Shown here in pieces: positions 11,817-26,201 of a DNA stretch of 64,000 nt (position 1 is its first letter; every line of letters starts with the position of its first letter). The position numbers and the translations under genes were made by a program. The notes under the pieces were generated by a model, which was given only the letters and a program-made list of their open reading frames with translations, searched no databases and was not told the DNA's origin. The stretch is from Marsupella aquatica (taxonomy: Eukaryota; Plantae; Marchantiophyta), in NCBI GenBank assembly GCA_973895155.1, contig OZ316899.1, positions 3,679,455 to 3,743,454 of the forward strand. Direction: 5' to 3'.

Positions 11817-13684
11817 TTAAATAACGATCATTGAATGTGTGTTGCTACAAAACATATTTGAGCAAGTAAGTCTACTTCCTGACTTATCAACCTTTCTATC
11901 TCGGTTGCAAGCGTCTTTAGGATACAAGTTTTTAAACTTAGAAGTACAGTCCCTAGTTTTTAGGACTTCCCAAACAAATTGCCGCTTATTTTGCAAATAT
12001 GGGCCGGAATAACCATCTCCAAGTAGACCTTTAGCAATTGAATTGATGTCACGGTCACTCATATCCTGCACCGGTGGCAAACTTTGCACGGTATGCTTCA
12101 CTTCCCAGGAAATCTCGTTTGCCGTGTGATCAAGGATAGTGAAATTATCGACGATGCCAGCAACACGGTGCCCCCAGGCTTGAGTGAGTCCTGCAAAGAT
12201 ATCACCATGCCTCCTTTGGGCTTCACCCGTATTGTAGGCGGACCATTTTGGGTAGTTAACATTCAGAAAGTGTCTTACATCAAAAGCATTGTGCATTCTT
12301 TGAAGAAGTGGAAGCAATATCTCCATCAGAAAAGTGTCGCCTCCCATGTTGTGAACAAATGGAACTAGAAACAACGTGTTAACATTTGGATTCACGAAAC
12401 ACTTTAGAGGAGAGTCATCGATGAGAACAGTATTTGTCGGACCATATCTATTGCCAAAACGATCCCAAACAGTTTGGATTTCCTTGAGAAGTATGTTTGC
12501 CTTCCCATCCGTAATATCTAACCTAAAAAAGCCAGTGTCAAACGTTTCTTCTTGGGTGAATACAAACTTGAATTGCTTTCATTCAGCATCATTGAAAACA
12601 AGATCCATCATTTCATTTGTTCTCGGCCTTCCTGCGCCGTAGAATCCGACATCTTGGAAATCCTCCACAAAGTGAATTCCCGGAATGTTGTCGAAAGAAG
12701 CAATTGACGGCACCCGGAATGTTGTCCATGTCAACTGTTTTGCTTCTTTCGATTTTCCTGTCATTTGTCCGGTTGAATCCAAAAGATTACCCTTGAGCCA
12801 ATTATTGCAAACCTCTCTCAATAAAGAGTAGAGCTTCTCGGGAGCAAACAAAATCCAATTGTACTCGCTGATGCTATTCACCTTTAATGTAACTTTCGCA
12901 AGTGTTTCATACTCCTGGGAGGAAAGACCAAACAACTCAAAGTTAGCCCAAAATACTGGAAAGGCTCTACACGACTCTCGCGTAGAAAGGAGAGAAGGAC
13001 AAAGTGTCTGAATTTTGTTCACAACTCTCATGGAGAACCTACCTGAAATTCTGGAGATTTCCGACCCGATGGAAGTGGACGAGCTGGTCGCCCCATATCA
13101 TTGTATTGCATTCTTGCATGTTTCACTTGATCAATAAATGGAGATGAAAACCGATGTGCCTCCGCCTGAAGGTTGTTCGCGTGTGAAATTTCCACAAGAA
13201 CTTTCACCGGAGTTGACCCTTTGAGAATTTGCGCTCGACGATATTTGAGTAAATTGGCTGTTTGCATGAGAGATGGTTGGGTCTTTGAACTTCGGATAAT
13301 TTTCTTGGCGGCCATTGTGGAATGCTGACCACTGATGGTAAAGAACTTGAATTCCGCAAGCTTCTTGGTGTCAATATCCTTTCCCACAAGGTCAATTAAA
13401 CTCGGTACTCCGTCGATCATCTTGTAAGGAACCAAATCTGCAGGTAAAGATTCTTGCCCTGCATTTGTCATCATCAGTTGCGCAAGATGGTTGACATGCT
13501 CCTCATTGAGGAGTCTCTCATTCATCTTTGCAGGAGGGGGATGGATGTTTTCAACCGAGATAGAAAAAAATTTGGATATCCCGAAACAATACCAAGACTT
13601 ATTCAACTCCAATGTTTTTTCTGCAATCTCCAATCGAGCACGGTCGACAACTAGCTTTGTGGAACTAAGGTTCTCGTCAATATC
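11817..13684 (-). pseudogene. 3' part of a ParB/Srx-like domain + FCP1/NIF-like (HAD phosphatase-like) gene, interrupted by the CACTA element
   Basis: ORF 13028..13687 has NERLLNEEHVNHLAQLMMTN...FFTISGQHSTMAAKKI (ParB/Srx-like; SGQHS at 13319-13333). 13031-11817 is one frame with a single internal TGA (12579) and contains NTVLIDDSPLKCFVNPN..DTFL..LLPLLQRM..AFDVRHFL, resembling the C-terminal half of NIF/FCP1-like phosphatases. Confidence 0.6.
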
Positions 13685-13699
13685 CACTAGTACATTTTT

Positions 13700-14230
13700 G
13701 ACGACTTTCCGATACTCAAAATGCGACTATTTTGTTATGTCCAAACCCGAGAGTCTCGGACGTTGTCCGATACAAATACCTTCATAATGTCTGATGTGCA
13801 CCGCATCGGATTTAGTTAGTCCGATGTGTTCCCTAACGCAACCAATATCCCATATCGGTTACATCGGAACATTTCCAAACTAAATGAATCAGACATTTGA
13901 CCAGAAAAGTATTGTCAAGGGTCCGATCTTCAGGTTATCGGATACAATGTGCGTTAGAGACAACATCGGATATTTTCCGATGTTTATTCCAATGGACATG
14001 GTTTTCGTAATAGAATACTATGGACATAAATTGCGTAAGGTAAAGAATCAGAAACATTTCCGAAGTGGTCAATATCGGACCCCTCTGTTGGAACATTGGA
14101 CGAGGGGTCCGATGTTTCCAATATCGGATGTGAGTGTTCCAATAGTTGTGATATCAGACAATTGCTACAATTGAGCCTTTTGTGCTCCGATGCATATCCG
14201 ATGCAAGTTTCATCGGATAGACCATTGGAC
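13700..14230. repeat. Left subterminal array of ATCGGA/TCCGAT motifs of the CACTA element
   Basis: Many direct and inverted (C)ATCGGA(C/T) and TCCGAT copies. Confidence 0.85.
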
Positions 14231-14408
14231 ACAGGTTATCTTGAGGTTCTTAGTTGAGTGGGGTTGAGAGAAGTATTAGAGATACTTTATGGAATATGTT
14301 TTATGCAAGAGTGGACATTGAGAAACAAATATAGTGCCGAGAAATATATAATGTCGGGAAAATAAACACAAATATGGTAGGGGGCTAGCTATAGTTGCTA
14401 CTTACTAG

Positions 14409-17400
14409 CTAAGTGGTGGAGGGGATGTCATCATCTTCCACTACAACTACGTTGGGTCTATCCTGGACTATGGATCGTGATTGAGGGATATATGGCATCA
14501 CAATAGACCAATTTGAGTCATCCGGATAAGGTAGGTAAAAACATTGCTCAAGGTGATGTGGGAATGCAAACGGATCTGAAGACCTCCAATTTGAGCTGAT
14601 AACACTTGTCTTCAACCAAGTAAATCCGCATGCATCATCTTCACATGTACGATTGTGGCCCACAAGATTCATCTTGAACCATTTGCACTTCAATGCCACT
14701 TCCTCCAAAGTAGTATGTGCATGGTACTTCACAATTAGGATCTCCTCAATCTTTCCATAATGAGCGATAGTGGACCGAATGGGATTCCTGTCCGATGTGT
14801 TGCTCTGTGAATCCTGGGTGAACCAACCCATGACCCCACAATCTTGTGTAGCTGCCCTCTTCTCATCAAGTCGTTCCACACGAAAGTGTCTTCCCTTGGA
14901 CCACATGGCAGTCCGAGTTGTGACTATAAGTAGTCTGTGGACCATGAACAAGGGTACGAAGCTTATCAGTCACCTCTGGATAATGCAATACACTCTCCCT
15001 TGTACCCACCAAGGCATCCACTTCTAACAAGTTTGACTTCATGTATGGGTGAAACTTAGGAAATATCCGTGGTCGTTGACTATTTTGCTTCTCCTCCTCA
15101 TAAAACGACGTCCACTCCCCTACAACCTCTGGTGAGTTGTACAACATAAATGTTGTGAGTTGCAAACGCTCCGCTGAGCTTAAGCTATGTTTGTACAATA
15201 AAACATACTCTCTGCTCCAAGATGACGCTCTGCAATGCTACCTTCCACCCTAGCGCGATTAGAGACATAGATTTCATCACTCCCATATAACGCTCTACCC
15301 AATACATCCATCGACAATGCACTGGGCCTGCAATTGCAACCTCACGCACTAAATGTATGAGAAAATGAACCTGACCATCAAAAAATGAGGGAGGGAGTGC
15401 CTTCTCCAACTTGCACACAACCTCTACTCCAAATGTCTCCATTGCAGCAGTTTCATCCTCCTGTACCTCCTTCTGACATACCCATCTCAAAAGCTTTCCC
15501 AATGACCAAAGGGCATCACAAAGTTCCTCACTACCCAATCCAATAATCGCAACTGGAATGACATGTTCTAGTAACCGATGATAATCATGTGTTTTCAAGT
15601 AAGATGGCCATTTTGGAGAATCATCCCCCCCAAATGCTTTTCGGAGATTTGCGCCATAACCTGTGGGAAACCTCATTGACCCAATACGTCTGCAAAACTC
15701 AGTGCGCTCTGCCCTACTCAAAACCCAAGGAGGATGGATGTTGGGGGGGTCACCAGGGGGGTCCAAAGATGGCCAAAAACCAAGAAGACCATGCATCCCC
15801 ATCTCCTCACAACTTTCTCTCCAATTGTGGTTCTTTTCCCCATATAGATGATGAATCAATGATCTGCCCACATTCCCCTCAATGTGCATCGGATCTAACA
15901 AGTGATTAATGGGCAACTCTGACCAATATGGCAATTGTGACAATGCAGACAAATGGGTCATGCCACATCGGAGAATTTGTAATGGATCATCTGGGTCTTG
16001 AACTCTTTCCCATACCTCTCTCCAATATGTTGGGACCCTTTCGCTGAGGTTGAGGACGAGTATCGGGTTGGCCGTCTTCAGTATCATACAAGAAATGATC
16101 ACTCCTCCAAGGATGGTCTTCTGGAAGATATTTGGTATGGCCAATGTAAACTATCTTACGCAAAGTACTTGACTTGCGTCTTGCCACACCCTCCAAATCT
16201 GGTCCGCACGAAGGGCAAGCTCTATAGCCTGATGTTTGCAATCCATAGATATATCCAAACCCTGCGCTTGATCAATACACAACCAGCCAATGAAATTAAG
16301 TTAAATGATACAAATTATAACCAAAAAAATTTAATTAATAAGCATGGTGTAAATAGATAGCAATGGAAATAAGGGTTTAATACCCTACCTGGCAAATCAT
16401 GCATGGTCCACATAAGAATGGCCTTCATGGTAAATGTGCGGGATAAACCTCCAGTGTTGTCACATCCGTCATAACAATCCACCCCACTCCAAAGTTTCAA
16501 AAGCTCATCAATCAAGGGTTGCAAGTAAATGTCAATCTTTTTTACTTGCTTAGGACCAGGGATGATCATTGAGAGTAGTAGATGACCTTTCTTCATGGCC
16601 ATCCATGGAGGGATATTGTAATTTGTGAGAACTACAGGCCATACTGAATATGGCTTAGCTTTACCTGCTAATGCAAAAGGACTGATACCATCTGCTGCCA
16701 AGCCAAGTCGAACATGTCGCGGGTCAGTTTTGAACTCACCCCATCTGCCCTCTACAAATCGATTGGCAGGAGAGTCTATCATCATCCGCATCGTACTAGA
16801 GTCTGTACCCATATCCAAACGATGTTGTGAGTGCCAGACCATATACTCAGCCAACTCTGCACAACGATATTGATGGCGCAATCGAGGGATGAGAGGAAAG
16901 TACCGCATAACCTTTTGAGGCACCTTCCCCGTCAACATGTCATCACGGAACCGCGGCTTCTCACACATAGGACATATAATTGCATTCTCATGCTCACCCC
17001 TGAAAAGAATGCAATCATTCACACATGCATGTATCACTTCATATTTTAGGCCAATGGACTTCAACACCTGTTTAGCCTCCTTCCAAGAGCTTGGCATGTT
17101 GTTGCCTGGTGGTAAAATATGATCATGTAGGGTACGAAAAACATCATCCAAAAGTAGGTTGCTTGCCCCATGTCTTTGTTGCACATTCAACAACAACATT
17201 ATTGCTGAGAGCCGAGATAGCCTACTCCCCTCAAATATGCGAGTACGAGCATGACGTTGAGCCTCTTCCCATTCCTTTTGCTGCCCCCTCCTAGAGACAT
17301 GCGGATGAGTGTTGTTGTCATCCTGGCTACCCATGTCCTCCATACCAATGTCCGCATCATCGTCATAGAACTGATCCATGAGCTCATCCATGGCCCTCTC

Positions 17401-17528
17401 CTCGTCAACATGATCTTCGGTTGGATTGCCCCCCTCATGCTGTACCTCAGTCTCCTCCCCACGATTGGCCACCATGGCCTCAACAAGGTGTTGCCGCATA
17501 GCTCGTGATATTACCCCAATATCAGGCA
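14409..17528 (-). pseudogene. CACTA TnpD/TNP2-type transposase (Transposase_21-, DUF4218- and DUF4216-like regions), multi-exon and frameshifted
   Basis: LKYEVIHACVNDCILFRG, RHVRLGLAADGISPF, SVWPVVLTNYNIPPW, IIPGPKQ..IDIYLQPLIDEL, WTMHDLPG (16.3-17.5 kb); HLLDPMHIEGNV and LKTHDYHRLL (15.2-16.1 kb); YGKIEEIL..KCKWF..DPFAFP (14.4-14.95 kb). Intron donor at ~16388. Confidence 0.93.
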
Positions 17529-17627
17529 CTACATATTGGTTCTATCATACAACATGCATCCATGTAATGACATCAACATCAATCTTGCCAACAATCTCAT
17601 TAATCCAACATTAGAAATGGAAAATAA

Positions 17628-17632
<5 letters not shown>

Positions 17633-17666
<34 letters not shown>
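17633..17666. repeat. (AT)n microsatellite, ~17 units
   Basis: Directly visible. Confidence 0.95.
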
Positions 17667-17669
<3 letters not shown>

Positions 17670-17680
17670 AGCCCAAGAAA

Positions 17681-18265
17681 CTAAGTTGGATGAGAACGTA
17701 GAGACAATTTTGGTGCATCCCAGTCATAATCACACAATAACTCCTCTCCCGCTCTAATGATCCTAATGGCCACTGTCATGATGTGGTCATCCATATGTTT
17801 CACAAAATATGGGTCTCTAGGTGGACCAAACATTTGGATCCACTCTACATTAGCCTCCAAATCTCTACCTCTACCTGTGGTACTATTGATGTATCCTGCT
17901 AAATTTCCATTCCTAACAGGGTCACCGTCAATCATCCGACAATGCCATGGCCTAGTGAACACCTCGTCTGGGCCTGAGTCCATCCTCAATGCATACACCC
18001 CCCAACTTGGGTGTTGACGCAACAAAATGTTCCAACTCTTTGCGTTATATACAGCCCCAATATAAGGGAAAAGGTGCTCTCCATCGTAGCCACGTCTCCA
18101 TGGCTTTGGAGGGACAACAATGTCATCCAAAGCATATAGACCATATCCTATATCAGCACCAATAGAGGACTCCTTCACTATCCAAGGACGGCCCCGTATC
18201 TCCACAGGTTCATCAATAGGAATGTAATCTGGAAATTTGAAGACACTGGGAGAAAAGTCTTTCAA
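17681..18265 (-). CDS. SET-domain (lysine methyltransferase-like) ORF carried inside the CACTA element
   Basis: IVKESSIGADIGYGLYALDDI (GxG motif), LFPYIG, IDGDPVRNGNLAGYINS..AN (variant of RFINHSCxPN) and VAIRIIRAGEELLCDY (GEELxxDY) occur in the canonical SET order. Confidence 0.8.
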   Translation of the reverse strand: MKDFSPSVFKFPDYIPIDEPVEIRGRPWIVKESSIGADIGYGLYALDDIVVPPKPWRRGYDGEHLFPYIGAVYNAKSWNILLRQHPSWGVYALRMDSGPDEVFTRPWHCRMIDGDPVRNGNLAGYINSTTGRGRDLEANVEWIQMFGPPRDPYFVKHMDDHIMTVAIRIIRAGEELLCDYDWDAPKLSLRSHPT

Positions 18266-18353
18266 AACGTCTGCAGCCCTGCCAGTGAGATAGGATACTC
18301 CAAATCGGCCCTCAACGCCATGTAATCTACATTTGTTGGAGGACGATCACTAC

Positions 18354-18944
18354 CTAACACCCCCTCCCGGATGTCTATGTGGTCCACAGGCTCGTACTGC
18401 CGTCTACGTCTATGAGACCGTGCTCGTGTACGTAGGAATCTTGAAGTCCCAACCTCTGGCTGAGATACTGGTTCTCCCTCTACATGCTCATGTATGGGGA
18501 TAGGAGCTGGGGGGCTAAGAGGAGGATGGGCAGGGGGGCTGCAAGCAAGTCTCTAGCCCTTGCTAGGAATCCTTCTAGCCACACAGCCTCATCAACCAAA
18601 GGAGGTGGGGGTCTACGGGGCACCTATTTCAGCACACAATTAATTTAGTGTTATTTAAATGCAAGCCCAATTGGAGTTTCATGAATGGAATTAAAGGGGA
18701 GACATATATATTACCTGGCTAGGCAAGTACCCTGGTGTATCACCCTCATGATGGCCATAGTTCTTAGTGTGCTCACCAGTCTCCCAGGCATGTCGGACCA
18801 CAAGTCCCTTGCATCTCACACACCAGCAAGGTATGGGCCCTAGTGGAGCACGAGGACGCTCAAGAGGAGGGGTGGAGGAACCTCCCCCTCTGACGAGCTC
18901 GTGTCTGAGTCTGAATCCGACGTGGAACTATCGGATGTAGACAT
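18354..18944 (-). pseudogene. N-terminal exons with a transposase-associated-domain-like CxCxxC..H motif
   Basis: PCWCVRCKGLVVRHAWETGEHTKNYGHH at ~18.75-18.83 kb. GT-AG intron 18714-18624. Each exon needs one frameshift correction. Confidence 0.55.
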
Positions 18945-20270
18945 CTACATATCATACACATCCAACATGTAAGGCGGATTCAACAACTTATCATGTTTAA
19001 AACCACAATTAAAGAGATATATAAACATCAATTGCCCTACCTCAATGATACCCGCGCTTTGCCGTGCCTATTGGGCTGTATTCTCTACACACAAGGTGTG
19101 GGATATCCAAAATCTCTGCAGGGTGGAGATGAGTTACACAAATGCTGCATAAATGCAAAAAAGTACTTGACTGACTTTTGGCACACGATATATCAAACTT
19201 GCCAAAGCAGACCTCAATGTTCCAATCCAAAATGGATGGATGGGCCGGGGAATTACATCATACCTCATGGATGCGCGGTCTCACACTGTGCATAGTGCAT
19301 TGTCCAAGAACAAAACCCTACCTAGCTACCCCCCTCAACCCAAAAAAAACAAACCTAGCTACCCCTCGATCAAAACCTAGGTACTGCACATAAAATCCAA
19401 TCACAACCATTAGTGTAACAAAGGCTTAACATTATCCTCAAAAAATGTCTAACAATATCCTATGTATTAAAACCCTATACCAATAAATCCCAAAACCCCT
19501 CAAAGCCCTAAAGTCCTTCAAAGAGAATTGGGATCAATTATAGTAAAAGAGTAAATCTAGGTACCACTTACTAGCCAAAACACCTTGACTTATCCTTGCA
19601 TCCATCACTCAATGTTGAGCAAGTTAAGGCCCTATAATTACAATACTATACAACTTAGCTTTATAAATTTAGTGTGCAATAAATTAAGCATGCAATCACA
19701 ACCATATTTTAGTTATCTTAGGAAATACAAAGTCATGAACTAACCCCAAAATTGTAGTTGCGAAGAAGGAACTTGCAAGAGGCCGAGTAACATATACACA
19801 ATATGCCATCCCGTTCATGGTGTTACCTAAAAAAAACCGGATATATTCAAAACGACCACAAAAAAGTGACTACAACCCTCCCTTCTATTACCCCACCCAA
19901 TTACTTAATTCCATGCTCCACATACAAACCCAAACACCCAAACTAAACCCAAAGTAAATAGATTTGACCTCCTATGGGACCAAAACATGGAATCCGTCAT
20001 AGCTGATCGAGGGGTCCGATACTAAAACAAACAAAAGCACCATCGTAAAAGCAGGAGAAAGAAAAGCAAGGAGGGGTCCGAAGCAAAACGCATCGGAAGG
20101 TCCGATTGTAGGTCCAATTCTTTCGGCTTCGGACATTGTGTTGCATAAAGTATCGGAAACAACATACCTGTTTTCAAAAAATAAGTCCCGATGCGGATGC
20201 AAAGATCCGGGCATCGGGCCAAGCTTTGCATTCCGTGTTTTGCGAGGCCGGGAGGCTCAGGTAGACGTCG

Positions 20271-22664
20271 GTGGGCAAGGAGAGAGACATGGTGGGAGGA
20301 GGATCAGGTGGTGGGGATGGGGCTGGACCCTCTCGGCCTTATGATGAGATTATGAGGGAGATTTTTATGAGTAGGGCAAGGCTAAGTGCCGAGGATGCAG
20401 AGAGAGTTGTGCCACTTCTTCAGACCTTGATTGATGGATCCAGGATTGAGGCAGAGAAAGCTGCGGCTGCAACCATTGCTGCAGAGAAAGCTGCAAAGAA
20501 GAAGCAAAAGGAGGCAAAGAGAGGCAGGGAAGATGGTGAGGAATCCCTCTCTCCCCGAAAAAGAGAGAGGAAGCTTAGCAAGGCAGCTAAGGAGGCTGAG
20601 AAGAAGAGAGTGGAGGAGTTAAAGCGAAAGGAAGCTGAGAGAGCTCTGAGGCCTGAGCTAGCCCTAAACTCAGGTGGCTCCCCAATGCCGAGAGGATACA
20701 ATCTCTTCCGCAGCCAGTTCAAGCAGGTGGTGAAGGCCAATTTGGGGCCATTAGATTACTGGGGAAGGAAGACTGAGGAGGAGAAAGGTCAAATTCAAGA
20801 GCAAGTGAAGGAGCGATTCAGGAATGGGGCCTCCCTTGATGACAGGTTCTTGAATAAGAGGATATCAGCTTCACTTTCAGACATGCGAAATCATCAGAGA
20901 GAGAAGTTCAAGAAGTACCTTGCTGATTTGCCAATTGATTCAGAGGTGGTCAGGGAGCAGGGCTGTCCAGATGTGCTCTCCCTAGATGAGTGGGCAGCTT
21001 GGCTTGAGGAGGAATTAGCAATCCGAGCCTGGCAAAAAAAGAGACAATGGGACCACAAAATCAGCTTGGCAGAGGAGAAGCGGAAGGCGGGGAGGAAATT
21101 GACATCCTCCCCCTCCAACAGAACCTACGGCAGTGGGGAGCTCAAGCAGTACGATTAAAAGAGCCACCCAAGGACATCATCAAAGCATTGGAGCGAGTCC
21201 AAGGGCGGCCCATCATCACTCACCGCATGGGGCAAGGAGGCTCCAATCGACTGAAAGCAGAGTTCGTAAGTGCCTTCTCCCTCCTCCCTAGCTCCTCCCC
21301 CCCGACCACCTGACCTTCTCTTGCGAAAAGTGACTCAATTTCTGTTGCCGAATGCCTTTATGCCGTTTCAGCCCGATGTTTTTTGCTCTCGGGACTGTTA
21401 TGTCCGATACTCATCTGAAGCTTTTAGCATCGGACCTAGTATCGGACCTGTTCTTATGCCATTTAGGGTTACCGGGATCCGATACTATTCCGTTGCTTTA
21501 AGTATCGGAAACAGCATCGGACCCCTCGTAAGAACAACAGGTTTTTTAAAATGTTGCTCTTTCACTCAATTAGGGGTATGGTTTGCATTCTTCAGTACCC
21601 TAAGAAGGCATGGGACCCCTTACAAGAATTGGGAAAAGTTGGGCCGATGCAAAGACTAGTTTTCATGCTAATGGGTTTCTCGTTTGGTATTGTGATGTGT
21701 CAGGAGCGGGACTGGGGTTGACCTATTGGGCCGTCAGAGAGGGAGTTAGCAAAGAGGGATGGACCCCGAGCTCTTAAGCTCCACCTTGAGGAGGAGCTGG
21801 GAGAGGTAATTGGTGTTGAATTGGCCCTATATAGGTTCAAATTGTTTTTGGTTGTGGTCAATATTAGAGAGCTTTCAAGGAACTATGTTTTCAAATGCAA
21901 TTTAACCCTACTTATGTATTGTGCAGGATGAGGAGACAGGGTCTGATGAGGGAGAGGAGGGTGAGGGTGAGGAGGAGGGTGATGGTGAAGAAGGAGAGGA
22001 TGGCAAGGGAGAGGAGGGAGATGATTCTGAGGCATCTGTGCCCTTAGAGGGTGTGGCAGAGCGATCCGGGAGGGTGCCCCGAGTTACCCCTACCCCTGCA
22101 GTCCCTCATGTTGCCCCCACATCAGCACAGAGGGTAGGTCATATGGTGTTCATGGTGTGGCCTCCCATCAGTCAGGAGTGTCACGGAGTGCGAGGCCCGG
22201 CCCCTCAGGGGGTAGTAGAGGTGGCACGGGACCAGACCATCGCTCTGGAGTACTATCCGGTACACCTGGCTCTTCTCAACGAGTGGGTCGTGACATGGAG
22301 GATGGTGGCTCTAGGGGGCGAGCGCCATCACGTGAGTCTGGTGGGAGTACCGCACGGCATGGGCCACAGACAGCATCTGCAGGGGATGCATCCCATCACT
22401 CTCACAGGTCCGGAGGGGGAGATGGCTCCTTCCACTCTGCCGTGTCAGGGGGTTTAGAGGCATCTGTTGCACCTCAGCATCCTAGCGGTGCATCTAGTGG
22501 GTCAGGGTCCCGGCCAGCATCAGGCCAACCCACTGGTGAGTAGGTGGTTGCCACGGTTGTGGGCAGCTAGAGAGAGGAGGGGTCTTGTGTTCCTGGACCT
22601 GTACCACCCCCTCGTTCTCGCCCGAAGAAGAAGAAGGGACGCAACACACCTTTTTAGAGCTTAG
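20271..22664 (+). pseudogene. CACTA TnpA-like / Transposase_24-like accessory gene, multi-exon, divergent from the transposase
   Basis: ORF 20271..21158 (FRSQFKQVVKANLGPLDYW..QVKERF..ISASLSDMRNHQREKF). Further GT-AG-bounded acidic and Gly/Ser/Arg-rich exons at ~21.7 and 21.9-22.66 kb. Confidence 0.55.
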
Positions 22665-22959
22665 TGGCATGAGCTAGATATGTAGTGCATGGTAGCTTTT
22701 ATACTAGCATATATATGTACCATCTAGTATAGTAAGCTACCTAGGCTACTACATATTGTACATACCAGGGGGTTTCCCTTTTTGAATATGACATTTTGAG
22801 CTTGTACATATAACATTCTTTTGCATCAATCATAATTTAACCCAATTTGGCCCATTTCACCATGAAACTAACCCTAAACCTTCAAATACCAACCCCATGA
22901 GGCCCACTCTTCTATCAAGAAAGAATCACCCTTGTCCGTTACTAGTCCAATGCAATATA

Positions 22960-23520
22960 CATCGGAAAAACACCTAATTATCCCATGCTTTCAGTATCGG
23001 GACATCCGATACTCTGCTCTTCGAAAAGTCCTATACTAAACGCATCGGACCCCTCGTCCAGCAAGCATGACAAAAATCCAATGTCCGATACCGTCCATTT
23101 CAGACCATCCAATATAAAAACAATCGGATTGTCCGATACATGCAACATTGGACCTTTCGATCTATAATCCAACGGATGTTGCGATACTAAACGCATCGGA
23201 AACTCCGATGCTATAAATTACGCACATTGCGAAGCTCTAGGTAACAGAAATTCCAATATGATATGTATCGGACGCCAAGTTTTGCGATTAAGGTCACCCA
23301 AGTGGATATCCGACTCTCTTTGCATCGGATACAAAATAGTCCAAAATGGTTTGCTTTGGAAATACCTATGTAGAGAGAAACGGAAAGTCCAAAGATTGTC
23401 CGATGGTCGATGTCCGATATGTGGAGAATGGGAACATACGAAGCGGGTTACATTGGAAGTACCAAATTTAGTGTGCAACTTTCGTGAAGGGATCCGATGG
23501 AGATGGCATCGGATAAAGGC
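22960..23520. repeat. Right subterminal array of ATCGGA/TCCGAT motifs of the CACTA element
   Basis: Same motif repeated many times in both orientations. Confidence 0.85.
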
Positions 23521-23537
23521 CCAAAAATGTACTAGTG

Positions 23538-23705
23538 ATCCACAGCTTCCTGATTTTTCTTTGCCTTCTTGGGCTTGCAAACGACAGCTTGAGAGGTGAT
23601 GACAACCTTCTTCTCAACGTTTGGGGCCTTCTTCTCCACGTCTCTGACCATGGGAGTTTTCACAACAATTTTCTGGTTAAATGGCGCATTTGTTGTTAAT
23701 TCCTA
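23538..23705 (-). pseudogene. Upstream exon of the ParB/FCP1-like gene (continues in frame across the CACTA insertion)
   Basis: Removing 13685-23537 and one ATC joins ...KPKKAKKNQEAVD to IDENLSSTKL in frame. Acceptor-like GTGTAG|GAA at ~23706. Confidence 0.75.
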
Positions 23706-23816
23706 CACCCAACAAAATGATGTGCACGGTCTCCAACCCCTTGCCTCATCTGCTTCAATTGATCGTCATCCAAACACCCACCCGCTGGACTGATCTACCA
23801 GGAATAGATGCTCGCC

Positions 23817-26201
23817 TAGGTCGTTCCAGAATTTGGAATTGAGTTGCCATGCAAGTTGCTTCGATGGAGTGGGTTTCTGTCTAGTGTTTAGTGTAGGGAA
23901 TATATCTTCGTAGAAGTGACAATCAACAAAGCGGGCTTTATAGACGTTGGCAGTTGTAGATTCCAAATAGTGTATGATGGATGTAGAGTTGAACCCAATG
24001 TAGATCCCTTTCTGTCGCTGGGGGCCCAGTTTGGTTCTCTTAGGTCCCATAATAGGCACCAAGACTTGGCATCCGAATGTCCAGAGGTGTGCCAGATTTG
24101 GTGCAGTGCCAAATGCCAAGTGGTGGGGGGAGCTTGTATTAAAGGCGGAGGGTCTGTACCGCAGTAATGCTGCGGCATGTAGGACAGCATGTCCCCAGGC
24201 CGAGGGGGGGAGCTGAGTTTGCATCAGTAGGGGTCTGGCTATGGATTGTATTCTTTTAATCAGGGATTCGGCGATCCCATTTTGAAAGTGTACATATGCG
24301 ACCGAGTATTTGATGTCTATGCCGACTGACAGGCAGAAGTCTTCAAATGTCTTGGAGGTAAACTCGCCAGCATTGTCTACTCGGAGTTTCTTAATGGAAT
24401 GGTCGGGAAATTGTGCTTTCAAGCTTAGTATATGAGCTAATAGTCTTGAGAAAACTAGGTTGCGGGTTGATAAAAGGGATACTTGTGACCATTTGGATGA
24501 CAAATTGATGGTGGCCAGAAAGAATCGGAATGGGCCATTGGGGGAGTCCACTGGGCCACAGACATCAGCATGGATTCGCTCCAGGAATCGAGGTATGTTC
24601 TTGTCTGTTTTTGATGGGGATGGTCTGATGGTTAGTTTCCCCTGTGAACAGGCCAAGCAGGGGGATTTTATGGAGGTTGGGTGCACTGAGTTTGGGATGC
24701 CCATGGTGTCTTTAATGATCTTATGGAACATCTAGGTCCCAGGGTGGCCCAAGCGGAGATGCCTTATTTCCGTGGTATTAAGTATGGGGGTTTCTGTATG
24801 GAAAGTATTGACCCTCATAGCATAGAAACCCATTGGGAATGCTGAGAAGGTCTCCTTAATTTATGTGCCAGTTGGGTTAGTGGCGATGATGTGTAGTACT
24901 TCTTGGGAGTTCTGTTGGCTTGTGTGGATGTGTAGGCCATTCTCACGAATATCCTTGAAACTTAGGAGGTTTCGTGTGGCCTTAGGTGCATAGATTGCAG
25001 ACTTTATGTGGATTGGGGTGCCCCGGGGAAGTAGTAATTGGGCCGGGCCATGGCCCTCCTCCAATTGATGGTGGCCCATAATAGTAGTAACCCTTCTTTG
25101 TGAGGGAGTAATGTAGGTAAAGTAATTTTTGGTCCGGAGTATCGAATGGGAGGTACCGCTGTCCAGGATACAAAAGGTAGGGTCATCAGGCGTCATTTGC
25201 ATCTCGGACGGGGTGACGAGGTGGATTTCAGGTAATATATTAGGCGTTTCCAGGAATGCGCCGTGTGTTTCATATGCATCTTGTTGCTTGGACTGTTGAT
25301 ATGAAGCAACTAAGTGTGATGGTGCCCGACATGTGGCCTTTACATGGCCTTTGGTCCCGCATTGATTACAAATGGGAGGGTTATCAGACTTATCTGAATT
25401 TGTATTGTTTCTCGTCCAGGTGTGTTGATTGCGTCCTGATTGTGATCTGCCTCAACCCCTGCCTCCTCTGAATGAAGTTCTTTCGCCACGTCCTTGGAAG
25501 TTGCCACGGCCTCGGAGAGTGGATCGTCCTCTATTTCCCCCTCGGCCCCTATATGTCATATTGGACCCGCGTCTCCATGTGTTGAAGTGTGTTTCGGGGT
25601 TGGGTTGTGGAGGTAGGGTGCCGGGGGGTCGTTGCTTAGTGTTGTTCAGTAGGAAGATCTGATATTTCTCTGCTAATAGCATGTGGGAGATTAATTCCGA
25701 ATAAGTAGTGAATCGCATGTTACGGTATTGTGTAGATAATACCAGATTTGTGGAATGGAATGTTGATAAAGTTTTTTTGATTTGTTCTTCTTTCCCAACC
25801 GGGTGGCCACAAATCGCGAGTTGAGAAGTGATGCGGAACAATTCGCTGTTGTATTCCGCAATTGTCTTGTGATCCTGCACGCGGAGATTAATCCAGACGT
25901 GCCGTGCCGCAGGTAAGAATATTGTGCGCGTGTGGTCGAATCTGGAATGGAGCTCGTCCCAGAGTATTCAAGGGTTGTAGGCGTTCATGTATTGGCGCTT
26001 CAGGGAATCGGCTAAGTGATGCCGAATCAATATCAATGCTTTTGCCTTCTCTTGGAGGGTGGGGCCATTGTCTGTAATAACTGTGTCCTCAAGGTTTTTA
26101 GATGCCAGATGGGCCTCGACATCCAAGTTCCATGATAGGAAATTGGATCCGTCTATGCACAATGCTTGAAAATATAACTTCTCAATGGTATTTGCAGCCA
26201 T
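23817..26201 (-). pseudogene. gag-pol: copia gag-protease-integrase polyprotein, fragmented
   Basis: ORFs 25968..26201, 25452..25880, 24861..25202 and 23766..24731 carry the motifs above. Confidence 0.88.

What the first reader, a model, noticed from the sequence alone, without database searches (positions are those of the whole stretch)
17529..18944. CACTA transposon with a SET-domain ORF, apparently nested in an alternatively spliced intron of the transposase gene
Seen: a 194-aa SET-like ORF lies between the transposase-associated-like N-terminal exons (18944-18354) and the TnpD exon (starts 17528). A donor TAG|GTAGTG at 18353 and an acceptor TGTAG| at 17530-17529 are phase-compatible (G+TG=Val) after one frameshift correction, which would splice out an 825-bp intron containing the SET ORF. 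Reading through would instead give a Zn-motif-SET protein. The NHS motif appears as NST. Inference: one locus could produce both the transposase and a TE-targeted lysine methyltransferase-like chromatin modifier. To my knowledge SET cargo is not a standard CACTA feature.
Basis: partly seen in the sequence, partly recalled or inferred. Interest (0 to 1): 0.8.

Follow-up and report, generated by a model that had tools for sequence, protein, structure and literature searches.

The report
CACTA transposon carrying a SET gene
A complete 9.9-kb CACTA DNA transposon, probably from a liverwort, carries a conserved SET-domain (lysine-methyltransferase-like) exon between the first exon and the body of its transposase gene, so the element probably encodes a chromatin-modifier-like protein that shares the transposase's zinc-motif head.

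Summary
Window 13685-23537 is a complete CACTA element with 16-nt TIRs and an ATC target duplication. Its minus-strand order is: zinc-motif exon, 91-nt intron, linker+SET exon, 139-nt spacer, then the Transposase_21/DUF4218/DUF4216 exons.

The SET ORF passes Pfam's threshold and folds as a SET domain (pLDDT 89.5). The same gene order recurs in about nine other lineages, including Calypogeia fissa and Riccia sorocarpa. SET dN/dS is 0.13-0.27, near the transposase's. SET-bearing transposases form one clade; fern and angiosperm relatives join the zinc motif directly to TnpD. SET is therefore a long-kept gene of a liverwort CACTA clade, not a chance ORF or recent capture.

Conserved instead are a phase-0 donor ending exon 1 (18715|18714) and a phase-0 AG at the opening of the TnpD ORF (17542|17541). 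This fits exon 1 being shared by a Zn-SET protein and TnpD.

No RNA data could be obtained, so splicing and enzyme activity are inferred. This copy has three frame breaks. SET cargo is known in HarbingerS, MuDR, Helitrons and Plavaka, but I found no report for plant CACTA. First readers noted the same in at least 8 other windows of this genome.

The parts
13685..23537 (-). Complete CACTA/EnSpm element, 9853 bp. The transposase gene is on the minus strand.
   Evidence: Perfect 16-nt TIR pair starting with CACTA (I21). 3-bp TSD ATC at 13682-13684 and 23538-23540. Removing the element restores a continuous minus-strand ORF.
13685..13700 (+). Left terminal inverted repeat, CACTAGTACATTTTTG.
23522..23537 (-). 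Right terminal inverted repeat, the reverse complement of the left one.
13700..14215 (.). Left subterminal repeat region with 15 copies of ATCGGA/TCCGAT.
   Evidence: about 0.24 copies per 500 bp expected by chance; inverted repeats between the two ends
22960..23510 (.). Right subterminal repeat region with 14 copies of ATCGGA/TCCGAT.
18715..18944 (-). Exon 1: Ser/Asp-rich start, then a CxCxxCKG...H...YG(R/H)H zinc motif of the transposase-associated type. It ends at a phase-0 donor, CAG|GTAATA. This copy has a 1-nt frame break near 18868-18872.
   Evidence: Homology to the PF13963-bearing N-termini of angiosperm TnpD: hhalign probability 92%, E 6.5e-7. Sub-threshold PF13963 hits in relatives. 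The intact form is seen in L013, L005, P0246 and P0247.
18624..18714 (-). Intron 1 (GT...AG, 91 nt) between exon 1 and the linker+SET exon.
   Evidence: Both junctions are phase 0. The Calypogeia fissa gene model P0226 makes the same join.
17681..18623 (-). Exon 2: Pro-rich and basic linker followed by the SET domain, ending at stop TAG 17683-17681. Frame breaks near 18540 and 18320 in this copy.
   Evidence: It is one continuous ORF in L013, L005, L012, L006 and L016.
17684..18316 (-). SET-domain core with a family-specific N-terminal extension (211 aa).
   Evidence: Pfam SET 28.2 bits. AF2 pLDDT 89.5, pTM 0.85. Foldseek top hits are LegAS4, SETD8, MLL1 and NSD1 at E 1e-7 to 1e-6. Family motifs in alignment A1.
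17542..17680 (-). AT-rich spacer with a (TA)n run at about 17630-17670. It ends in a T-rich stretch plus TAG, the candidate 3' splice site. An internal promoter here is the rival reading.
   Evidence: Depth across family copies drops about 18-fold in this bin in run X1.
16318..17541 (-). First large TnpD exon (acidic region plus Transposase_21). The ORF opens exactly after the conserved AG.
   Evidence: Pfam PF02992 138.8 bits. 71-72% identical to the Calypogeia fissa and L005 counterparts. Acceptor comparison.
15188..16271 (-). TnpD middle exon (end of Transposase_21 plus DUF4218), split over two frames in this copy.
   Evidence: Pfam PF13960 68.6 bits. It is a single ORF in L005. Most family contigs lack one base at 16032.
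14412..15237 (-). TnpD last exon (DUF4216 region), split over two frames in this copy.
   Evidence: Pfam PF13952 27.5 bits, below its 30.6 cut-off. 83-87% identical to L005 and L012.
20271..22664 (+). Divergently oriented second gene of the element (Lys/Glu-rich ORF 20271-21158 and further ORFs). Function unknown.
   Evidence: 52% identical over 198 aa to a minus-strand 532-aa gene at the same relative position in the Calypogeia locus L012. Also found in L002 and L006. No Pfam family.

Best explanation
The window holds one (decayed or mis-assembled) copy of a high-copy CACTA family. The family belongs to a clade, so far seen by name only in liverworts, whose transposase locus has acquired and kept a SET-domain exon.

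Shown:
- The element is complete.
- The conserved gene order is zinc-motif exon 1, linker+SET exon with its own stop, short spacer, then the TnpD exons.
- The SET part has the SET fold and most catalytic motifs: GxG, the invariant N-S of YINS, the NxEW Asn, and GEELxxxY. It is under purifying selection about as strong as on the transposase.
- Exon 1 is homologous to the transposase-associated zinc domain that heads TnpD in fern and angiosperm CACTAs.

Inferred mechanism:
- Transcription starts upstream of exon 1.
- The phase-0 donor at 18715|18714 is joined either to the phase-0 acceptor at 18624|18623 or to the phase-0 acceptor at 17542|17541.
- The first join gives a Zn-linker-SET protein of roughly 390 aa that ends at 17681.
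- The second join skips the SET exon and gives a TnpD with the ancestral zinc head. This resembles the shared first exon of TnpA and TnpD in En/Spm.
- Through the shared head, the SET protein would reach the same places or partners as the transposase and methylate a lysine there, on a histone or on another protein.
- The most likely purpose is to shape the element's own chromatin state, either as anti-silencing or as self-restraint. A role in repair of excision breaks is a further possibility.
For: Element boundaries:
- TIRs, TSD and a restored empty site.

SET is real:
- Pfam match above threshold.
- AF2 pLDDT 89.5.
- 330 PDB SET-domain matches at E<=0.001, topped by LegAS4 and SETD8.
- Invariant and near-invariant motif residues in 37 family members.
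- LegAS4, an active methyltransferase as far as I know, has YINFS at the NHS position.

SET belongs to the element:
- The order Zn exon, SET, TnpD recurs on the same strand in L012 (Calypogeia fissa), L002-L005, L006, L007, L008-L010, L014, L016, and L001/L011 (Riccia sorocarpa).
- Read depth over SET equals that over the transposase in four runs.
- First-stage notes report the same thing in at least 8 other windows of this genome (unchecked).

Selection:
- dN/dS for SET is 0.13-0.27, and 0.15 at an unsaturated dS of 0.37.
- For comparison it is 0.08-0.13 for TnpD and 0.44 for the linker.

Not a recent host capture:
- phmmer against 1.84 billion proteins finds only this family (87 hits).

One origin:
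- 8 of 9 verified SET-bearing TnpDs fall in one clade (SH-aLRT 98) that contains no Zn-contiguous TnpD.
- Fern and angiosperm relatives with the zinc motif joined directly to TnpD lie outside it.

Exon 1 homology:
- Homologous to the PF13963 head of TnpD.

Splicing model:
- A G|GT at phase 0 at the homologous place after the zinc motif in ten loci: W, L013, L012, L005, L008, L006, L016, L001, L011, L007.
- An AG at phase 0 at the homologous first codon of the TnpD exon in seven loci. In six of them it is the TAG that opens the ORF, after a T-rich tract.
- The peptide (Y/F)V.P...V..R.M(R/K), encoded directly after that AG, is conserved between lineages only about 54% identical. In W, L012 and L005 it lies upstream of the first ATG, with many third-position differences.
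- The Riccia gene model P0044 uses this same acceptor.
Against: - No transcript evidence of any kind. The four runs that hold the sequence behave as DNA, and none of the joints listed runs from the exon-1 donor to either acceptor or has clean GT-AG ends. The exon-1 profile search returned only genomic, intron-read-through ORFs.
- Many lineages have an ATG at or near the basic motif at the start of the TnpD exon (MR(E/Q)...). The AT-rich spacers also contain TATA-like strings. TnpD could therefore have its own promoter and start codon.
- The canonical NHS His is replaced (N-S-T), there is no post-SET Cys cluster, and no activity or substrate can be deduced.
- This copy has three frame breaks in the Zn-SET gene and at least two in TnpD. 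What is said about function applies to the family, not to this copy.
- Pfam itself does not call PF13963 on exon 1 above threshold.
Confidence: 0.6

Rival explanations
1. Two adjacent but separate genes. A Zn-SET gene (exons 1 and 2) ends with its own polyadenylation site. TnpD is transcribed from a promoter in the 139-bp AT-rich spacer and translated from the first ATG of its exon. In this clade the transposase has therefore lost the zinc head to the SET protein.
For: - A Met at or near the basic motif starts most ORF calls of the clade.
- TATA-like strings lie in the spacers, for example CTATATAAG in L008 and (TA)n in the window.
- Annotators of Calypogeia and Riccia mostly call the two as separate genes.
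Against: - The ORF opens exactly at a conserved AG, in phase with the exon-1 donor, in seven lineages.
- Codon-like conservation lies upstream of the first ATG in W, L012 and L005. In L005 the homologous Met is Ile, so 22 conserved codons would go untranslated.
- Outside the SET clade, the TnpDs whose N-terminus is present in the listed hits carry the zinc head on the same polypeptide.
Confidence: 0.28
2. One reading: an 825-nt intron from the donor at 18353 to the acceptor at 17530/17529 removes the SET ORF.
For: GT and AG are present and phase-compatible in this copy.
Against: - The donor lies inside the continuous linker+SET coding exon.
- The matching residues in the closest intact relative, P0230, are Asn-His, whose codons leave no GT there.
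- The acceptor AG reads AC in L005.
- The model needs the frame of a copy that carries three frame breaks.
Confidence: 0.04
3. A single SETMAR-like fusion protein, Zn-SET-TnpD, made by splicing out the SET stop codon or reading through it.
For: One Riccia gene model (P0044, 773 aa) joins a SET remnant to TnpD.
Against: - All eight loci compared keep a stop right after SET.
- No GT donor in a constant phase lies near it.
- 136-292 nt of unconserved spacer follow, and the spacer carries in-frame stops where the frames agree.
- P0044 comes from a copy with a broken SET.
Confidence: 0.04
4. A captured host gene fragment carried passively (transduplication) with no function for the element.
For: CACTA elements are known to pick up host fragments (general knowledge).
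Against: - It is kept across a clade spanning Marchantiopsida and Jungermanniopsida, with dN/dS of 0.13-0.27.
- There is no detectable host parent by sequence.
- Placement and phase are constant.
Confidence: 0.03

Closest known systems
En/Spm (maize CACTA): TnpA and TnpD made from one transcription unit by alternative splicing
   Same: It is in the same superfamily, with CACTA TIRs, a 3-bp TSD, subterminal repeats and a TnpD-type transposase. The proposed logic is also the same: two proteins sharing a first exon. The En/Spm comparison rests on general knowledge.
   Different: The second product here is a SET-domain protein, not TnpA. A further, divergently oriented gene is present. Splicing is inferred from conserved phase-0 sites only.
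TE-borne SET genes: HarbingerS, Phytophthora MuDR, Helitron captures (Kojima and Jurka 2014, as cited in PMC12730594 and bioRxiv 10.1101/2025.02.11.637652)
   Same: A DNA transposon that carries a SET-domain lysine-methyltransferase-like accessory gene.
   Different: The superfamilies and hosts differ. Here the SET exon sits inside the transposase locus behind the transposase's own zinc-head exon. Sequence relationship to those SETs was not tested, because their sequences are not in the tools.
Plavaka (EnSpm/CACTA superfamily) accessory gene PAG2 of the red alga Bostrychia (bioRxiv 10.1101/2025.02.11.637652)
   Same: A CACTA-superfamily element with a SET-containing accessory gene.
   Different: PAG2 combines a DNA methylase domain (PF01555) with SET, is a separate gene in a giant 17-19 kb element, and comes from a red alga. 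The protein here is zinc head plus linker plus SET, in a canonical plant-type CACTA.
SETMAR/Metnase (primate SET + mariner transposase fusion)
   Same: A SET domain and a DNA-transposase gene joined at one locus through splicing.
   Different: SETMAR is a host gene that captured a transposase and makes one fused polypeptide. Here a mobile element carries the SET, a stop codon separates it from the transposase, and a fusion is not supported.
Solved SET domains LegAS4/RomA of Legionella and SETD8/KMT5A
   Same: These are the best structural matches: Foldseek E about 1e-7, TM by query 0.46-0.50. LegAS4 is also the best sequence-profile match and likewise lacks the His of NHS, having YINFS.
   Different: Only 22-25% identical. 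The family has its own roughly 45-aa N-terminal extension and an insert between the N-S motif and the NxEW motif. Nothing about substrate can be carried over.
VANDAL (MULE) VANC anti-silencing proteins
   Same: A transposon-encoded protein thought to act on the element's own chromatin.
   Different: VANC is not an enzyme of this kind. A chromatin role is only inferred here.

Membership tests
CACTA / EnSpm superfamily | Terminal inverted repeats beginning with CACTA | tested here: met
   16-nt perfect pair at 13685-13700 and 23522-23537.
CACTA / EnSpm superfamily | 3-bp target site duplication | tested here: met
   ATC on both sides. The empty-site join restores an ORF.
CACTA / EnSpm superfamily | TnpD-type transposase (Transposase_21, with DUF4218/DUF4216) | tested here: met
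   PF02992 138.8 bits and PF13960 68.6 bits. PF13952 scores 27.5 bits, just under its cut-off.
CACTA / EnSpm superfamily | Arrays of short subterminal repeats | tested here: met
   15 and 14 copies of ATCGGA/TCCGAT in the two subterminal 0.5-kb regions.
SET-domain lysine methyltransferases (PF00856) | Profile match above the curated threshold | tested here: met
   28.2 bits against 22.4. Relatives score 19-30 bits.
SET-domain lysine methyltransferases (PF00856) | SET fold | tested here: met
   AF2 pLDDT 89.5. The listed PDB and Swiss-Prot matches are SET-domain proteins, nearly all named lysine methyltransferases.
SET-domain lysine methyltransferases (PF00856) | GxG cofactor motif and the C-terminal ELxxxY with the catalytic Tyr | tested here: met
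   G57 and G59, and E192 and Y197, are invariant or at least 90% conserved in 37 members.
SET-domain lysine methyltransferases (PF00856) | N-H-S motif | tested here: not met
   It reads N-S-(S/T) throughout the family. N144 is at least 90% conserved and S145 is invariant, and the His is absent. LegAS4 also lacks the His, so this does not by itself argue for inactivity.
SET-domain lysine methyltransferases (PF00856) | Methyl transfer from S-adenosylmethionine to a lysine | not testable with these tools
   Needs an enzyme assay.
Transposase-associated domain (PF13963), for exon 1 | Profile match | tested here: inconclusive
   No Pfam hit for the window-type exon 1. Sub-threshold hits of 13.6-15.2 bits in two SET-clade relatives fall on the same profile segment 28-62. 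P0130 scores 24.5 bits. Profile-profile comparison gives probability 92%, E 6.5e-7 over 30 columns.
Transposase-associated domain (PF13963), for exon 1 | CxCxxC ... H ... G motif at the N-terminus of the TnpD locus | tested here: met
   Alignments A2 and A3.
En/Spm-type shared-exon alternative splicing | Splice sites of matching phase for both products | tested here: met
   Phase-0 donor and two phase-0 acceptors, conserved across lineages.
En/Spm-type shared-exon alternative splicing | Transcripts with both junctions | not testable with these tools
   The runs found are DNA-like. No spliced protein fragments are in the database.
SETMAR-like SET-transposase fusion | SET and transposase in one polypeptide | tested here: not met
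   A stop follows SET in all loci, and there is no conserved donor near it.

The most novel reading that the evidence does not exclude
A whole clade of liverwort CACTA transposons uses one promoter and one zinc-finger first exon for two proteins, the transposase and a SET lysine methyltransferase. The shared head takes the methyltransferase to the element's own ends or to the transposase's partners. There it writes a histone mark that counteracts host silencing or marks excision breaks for repair. This would be a self-targeted, transposon-encoded histone writer.
Probability: 0.3. Interest if true: 0.85.

Novelty: new variant of a known kind. Interest (0 to 1): 0.66.

Why it matters
Transposon-encoded proteins that act on chromatin are rare. 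The known ones (VANC, the TET/JBP genes of fungal elements) have shown how mobile elements fight host silencing. Here a SET-domain gene has been kept under selection in a diversified, high-copy CACTA clade of bryophytes. It is wired to the transposase's own N-terminal domain. That gives a concrete, testable case of an element that may write histone marks on itself, in a plant group where TE silencing uses marks differently from flowering plants. It also warns annotators that "SET domain-containing proteins" in liverwort genomes, such as the Riccia and Calypogeia entries, can be transposon genes.

Tried and rejected
RNA evidence:
- Both sequencing-run searches returned the same four runs of unstated kind.
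- Laying them gave thousands-fold depth, many variant contigs, and no joint running from the exon-1 donor to either acceptor, so they are DNA.
- A profile of exon 1 searched against 5.8 billion proteins gave only four ORFs, all of which read into the intron.

Other dead ends:
- A mixed alignment meant to catch Zn+TnpD spliced products (A4) misaligned the short peptides and was not used.
- Pfam on exon 1 gave no above-threshold PF13963 hit.
- The profile search against PDB sequences was weak (best E 0.02). The fold search was needed.
- The divergent plus-strand gene has no Pfam family.
- Literature searches for SET in land-plant or liverwort CACTAs found nothing specific.

Rejected readings:
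- A SET-TnpD fusion.
- A recent host capture.

The distant SET homologue P0065 of Calypogeia is not next to a transposase, so not every family member is demonstrably inside a CACTA. L014's TnpD is fragmentary and on a long branch, so its place outside the SET clade is not informative.
Full report
**The element.** The finding lies inside a complete CACTA transposon at window 13685-23537.
- A perfect 16-nt inverted repeat beginning with CACTA closes both ends (pair I21).
- The 3-bp target duplication ATC flanks it.
- Joining the flanks with one ATC restores a continuous minus-strand ORF, so the boundaries are exact.
- Both subterminal 0.5-kb regions carry 14-15 copies of ATCGGA/TCCGAT, against an expectation of about 0.24 per 500 bp.
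- On the minus strand, Pfam finds Transposase_21 (138.8 bits), DUF4218 (68.6 bits) and a sub-threshold DUF4216.
- A second gene runs divergently on the plus strand from 20271. It is conserved in relatives but has no known domain.

**The observation.**
- The 194-aa ORF at 17681-18265 (-) matches Pfam SET at 28.2 bits, above the 22.4 threshold.
- phmmer against 1.84 billion representative proteins finds 87 relatives, 14 of them below 1e-30. It finds nothing else, so there is no host SET gene within reach of sequence search.
- With a 37-member alignment, AlphaFold2 gives a confident model: pLDDT 89.5, pTM 0.85.
- Its best structural matches are all SET lysine methyltransferases: LegAS4, SETD8, MLL1, NSD1, EHMT1 and Clr4, and in Swiss-Prot KMT5A, SUV39H1 and ATXR5/6.
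- The family keeps the GxG motif, an invariant Asp-Gly, the N-S of YINS, the Asn of NxEW, and GEELxxxY with its Tyr.
LegAS4 has YINFS at that place, so this alone does not indicate a dead enzyme.

**Gene structure.** Reading the three frames against intact relatives gives the following layout.
- Exon 1 runs from the ATG at 18944 to a CAG|GT donor at 18715|18714. It encodes a Ser/Asp-rich stretch and a CxCxxCKG...H...YG(R/H)H motif.
- A 91-nt intron ends in AG at 18625-18624.
- Exon 2 begins at 18623 and runs as a single reading frame through a Pro-rich and basic linker into SET, stopping at 17681.
- This is seen intact in L013 (83% DNA identity), L005, L012, L006 and L016.
- The Calypogeia fissa gene model P0226 makes exactly this exon 1-exon 2 join.
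- The window copy has 1-nt deletions near 18872, 18540 and 18320 relative to L013.
- In the four sequencing runs, all or nearly all contigs carry an extra base at 18868 and 18319.
- The transposase exons are also split over frames in this copy.
- Whether these are true decay of this copy or assembly errors cannot be told from contigs.

**SET is a gene of the element.**
- The order Zn exon, linker+SET, short spacer, TnpD, all on one strand, recurs in several places:
  - Calypogeia fissa (L012; SET 74% and TnpD 71% identical to the window);
  - three samples of one further lineage (L002-L005, 60%);
  - L006, L007, L008-L010 and L016;
  - a distant subgroup (L014, 35%);
  - two Riccia sorocarpa loci (L001, L011).
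- Depth over SET in the four runs equals that over the transposase and falls in the spacer and the linker.
- dN/dS:

| Region | dN/dS |
|---|---|
| SET | 0.13-0.27 |
| SET, window vs L013 (dS 0.37, not saturated) | 0.15 |
| TnpD | 0.08-0.13 |
| Linker | 0.44 |

- In a TnpD tree, 8 of the 9 verified SET-bearing loci fall in one clade (SH-aLRT 98) with 17 proteins of unknown status and no Zn-contiguous protein.
- The fern (Adiantum) and angiosperm relatives, which have the zinc motif on the same polypeptide as TnpD, lie outside that clade.
- The ninth locus, L014, is fragmentary and on a long branch.
- A single acquisition at the base of a clade so far named only from liverworts is the simplest reading.
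- The nearest named relatives (Calypogeia 72-74%) suggest that the window is from a liverwort. This is an inference.

**What exon 1 is.**
- A profile of exon-1 peptides aligns to the N-termini of PF13963-bearing TnpD proteins with probability 92% and E 6.5e-7 over the CxCxxC...H...G core.
- Pfam itself gives sub-threshold PF13963 hits on the same profile segment for two SET-clade relatives, and 24.5 bits for the SET-less relative P0130.
- In P0130 the zinc motif and TnpD are one ORF.
- So the SET exon sits between the ancestral head and the body of the transposase.

**How TnpD is made.**
The matching residues in the closest intact one, P0230, are Asn-His, whose codons leave no GT there.
- Two other things are conserved:
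  - a G|GT in phase 0 a few codons after the zinc motif in ten loci. These include the three lineages that lack intron 1, where it is the Val codon of ...E|V...;
  - an AG in phase 0 at the homologous first codon of the TnpD exon in seven loci. In six of them it is the TAG that opens the ORF, after a T-rich tract.
- The residues directly after that AG, (Y/F)V.P...V..R.M(R/K), are conserved between lineages about 54% identical. In the window, L012 and L005 they precede the first ATG, and their differences fall mostly at third codon positions.
- The Riccia model P0044 uses the same acceptor.
- This fits exon 1 being spliced either to exon 2 or, skipping it, to the TnpD exon.
- Against this, many lineages have a Met at the start of the basic motif, and the spacers hold TATA-like strings. 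A separate TnpD promoter therefore remains a serious rival; I put it at about 0.28.
- A SET-TnpD fusion is unlikely, because a stop follows SET everywhere and no donor near it is conserved.

**RNA evidence.** None could be obtained. The runs found are DNA-like, and the exon-1 profile search returned only ORFs that read into the intron.

**Comparison with what is known.**
- SET accessory genes are described for HarbingerS and Phytophthora MuDR (Repbase Reports, cited in PMC12730594).
- They are also described for Helitrons and for Plavaka elements of a red alga, where PAG2 combines a DNA methylase domain with SET (bioRxiv 10.1101/2025.02.11.637652).
- I found no report for land-plant CACTAs or for liverworts.
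- The arrangement here, a SET exon behind the transposase's own zinc-head exon in a canonical plant CACTA and kept across a clade, is a new variant of that known kind.
- First-stage notes of this scan describe the same thing in at least eight other windows of this genome. These notes are unchecked and were not used as support.

**Verdict.**
The nested position, the Zn-SET product and probable alternative splicing hold. The stated splice sites and the single frameshift do not.
- Function as a self-targeted lysine methyltransferase is inferred, not shown.

Noticed in passing
window 13028-13687 (-) and 23541-23700 (-): The CACTA element is inserted in a minus-strand ORF. Removing it and one ATC joins ...KKNQEAVD to IDENLSSTK... 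in one frame. This is the gene that another first-stage note calls ParB/Srx-like.
   Followed up: partly
window 20271-22664 (+); L012 6473-8530 (-): A divergently oriented second gene of the element (Lys/Glu-rich, no Pfam family) is conserved in Calypogeia (52% over 198 aa), L002 and L006. Clusters of the subterminal motif ATCGGA also lie at 20015-20152, just upstream of its start, and at 21403-21516.
   Followed up: partly
L015 10001-11512 (Calypogeia fissa, P0065; second copy P0244): A 503-aa intronless protein has a Cys-rich N-terminal half and a SET domain of this family (33% identical). It lies between host-like genes (mL59, FtsH) with no transposase nearby. It is possibly a domesticated copy or cargo of another element.
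   Followed up: partly
L016 2887-4926: In this SET-bearing lineage the middle and last TnpD exons form one 679-aa ORF, so the intron is absent. In Riccia (L001, L011) and L007, intron 1 between the zinc exon and the linker is absent. Intron content therefore varies within the clade.
   Followed up: no
window 17630-17670: A (TA)n microsatellite of about 40 nt lies in the spacer between the SET stop and the TnpD exon. Reads appear cut there, and copies vary in length.
   Followed up: no
window 23766-24731 (-): A 321-aa ORF that reads like a retrotransposon integrase (by eye; not searched) lies directly beyond the right end of the CACTA element.
   Followed up: no
window 14350-20300, runs X1-X4: The family is held by runs labelled as two different organisms (A and B) at similar word shares (0.45-0.57). 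There are hundreds to thousands of variant contigs at 90-99% identity, so it is a high-copy, still diversified family.
   Followed up: no
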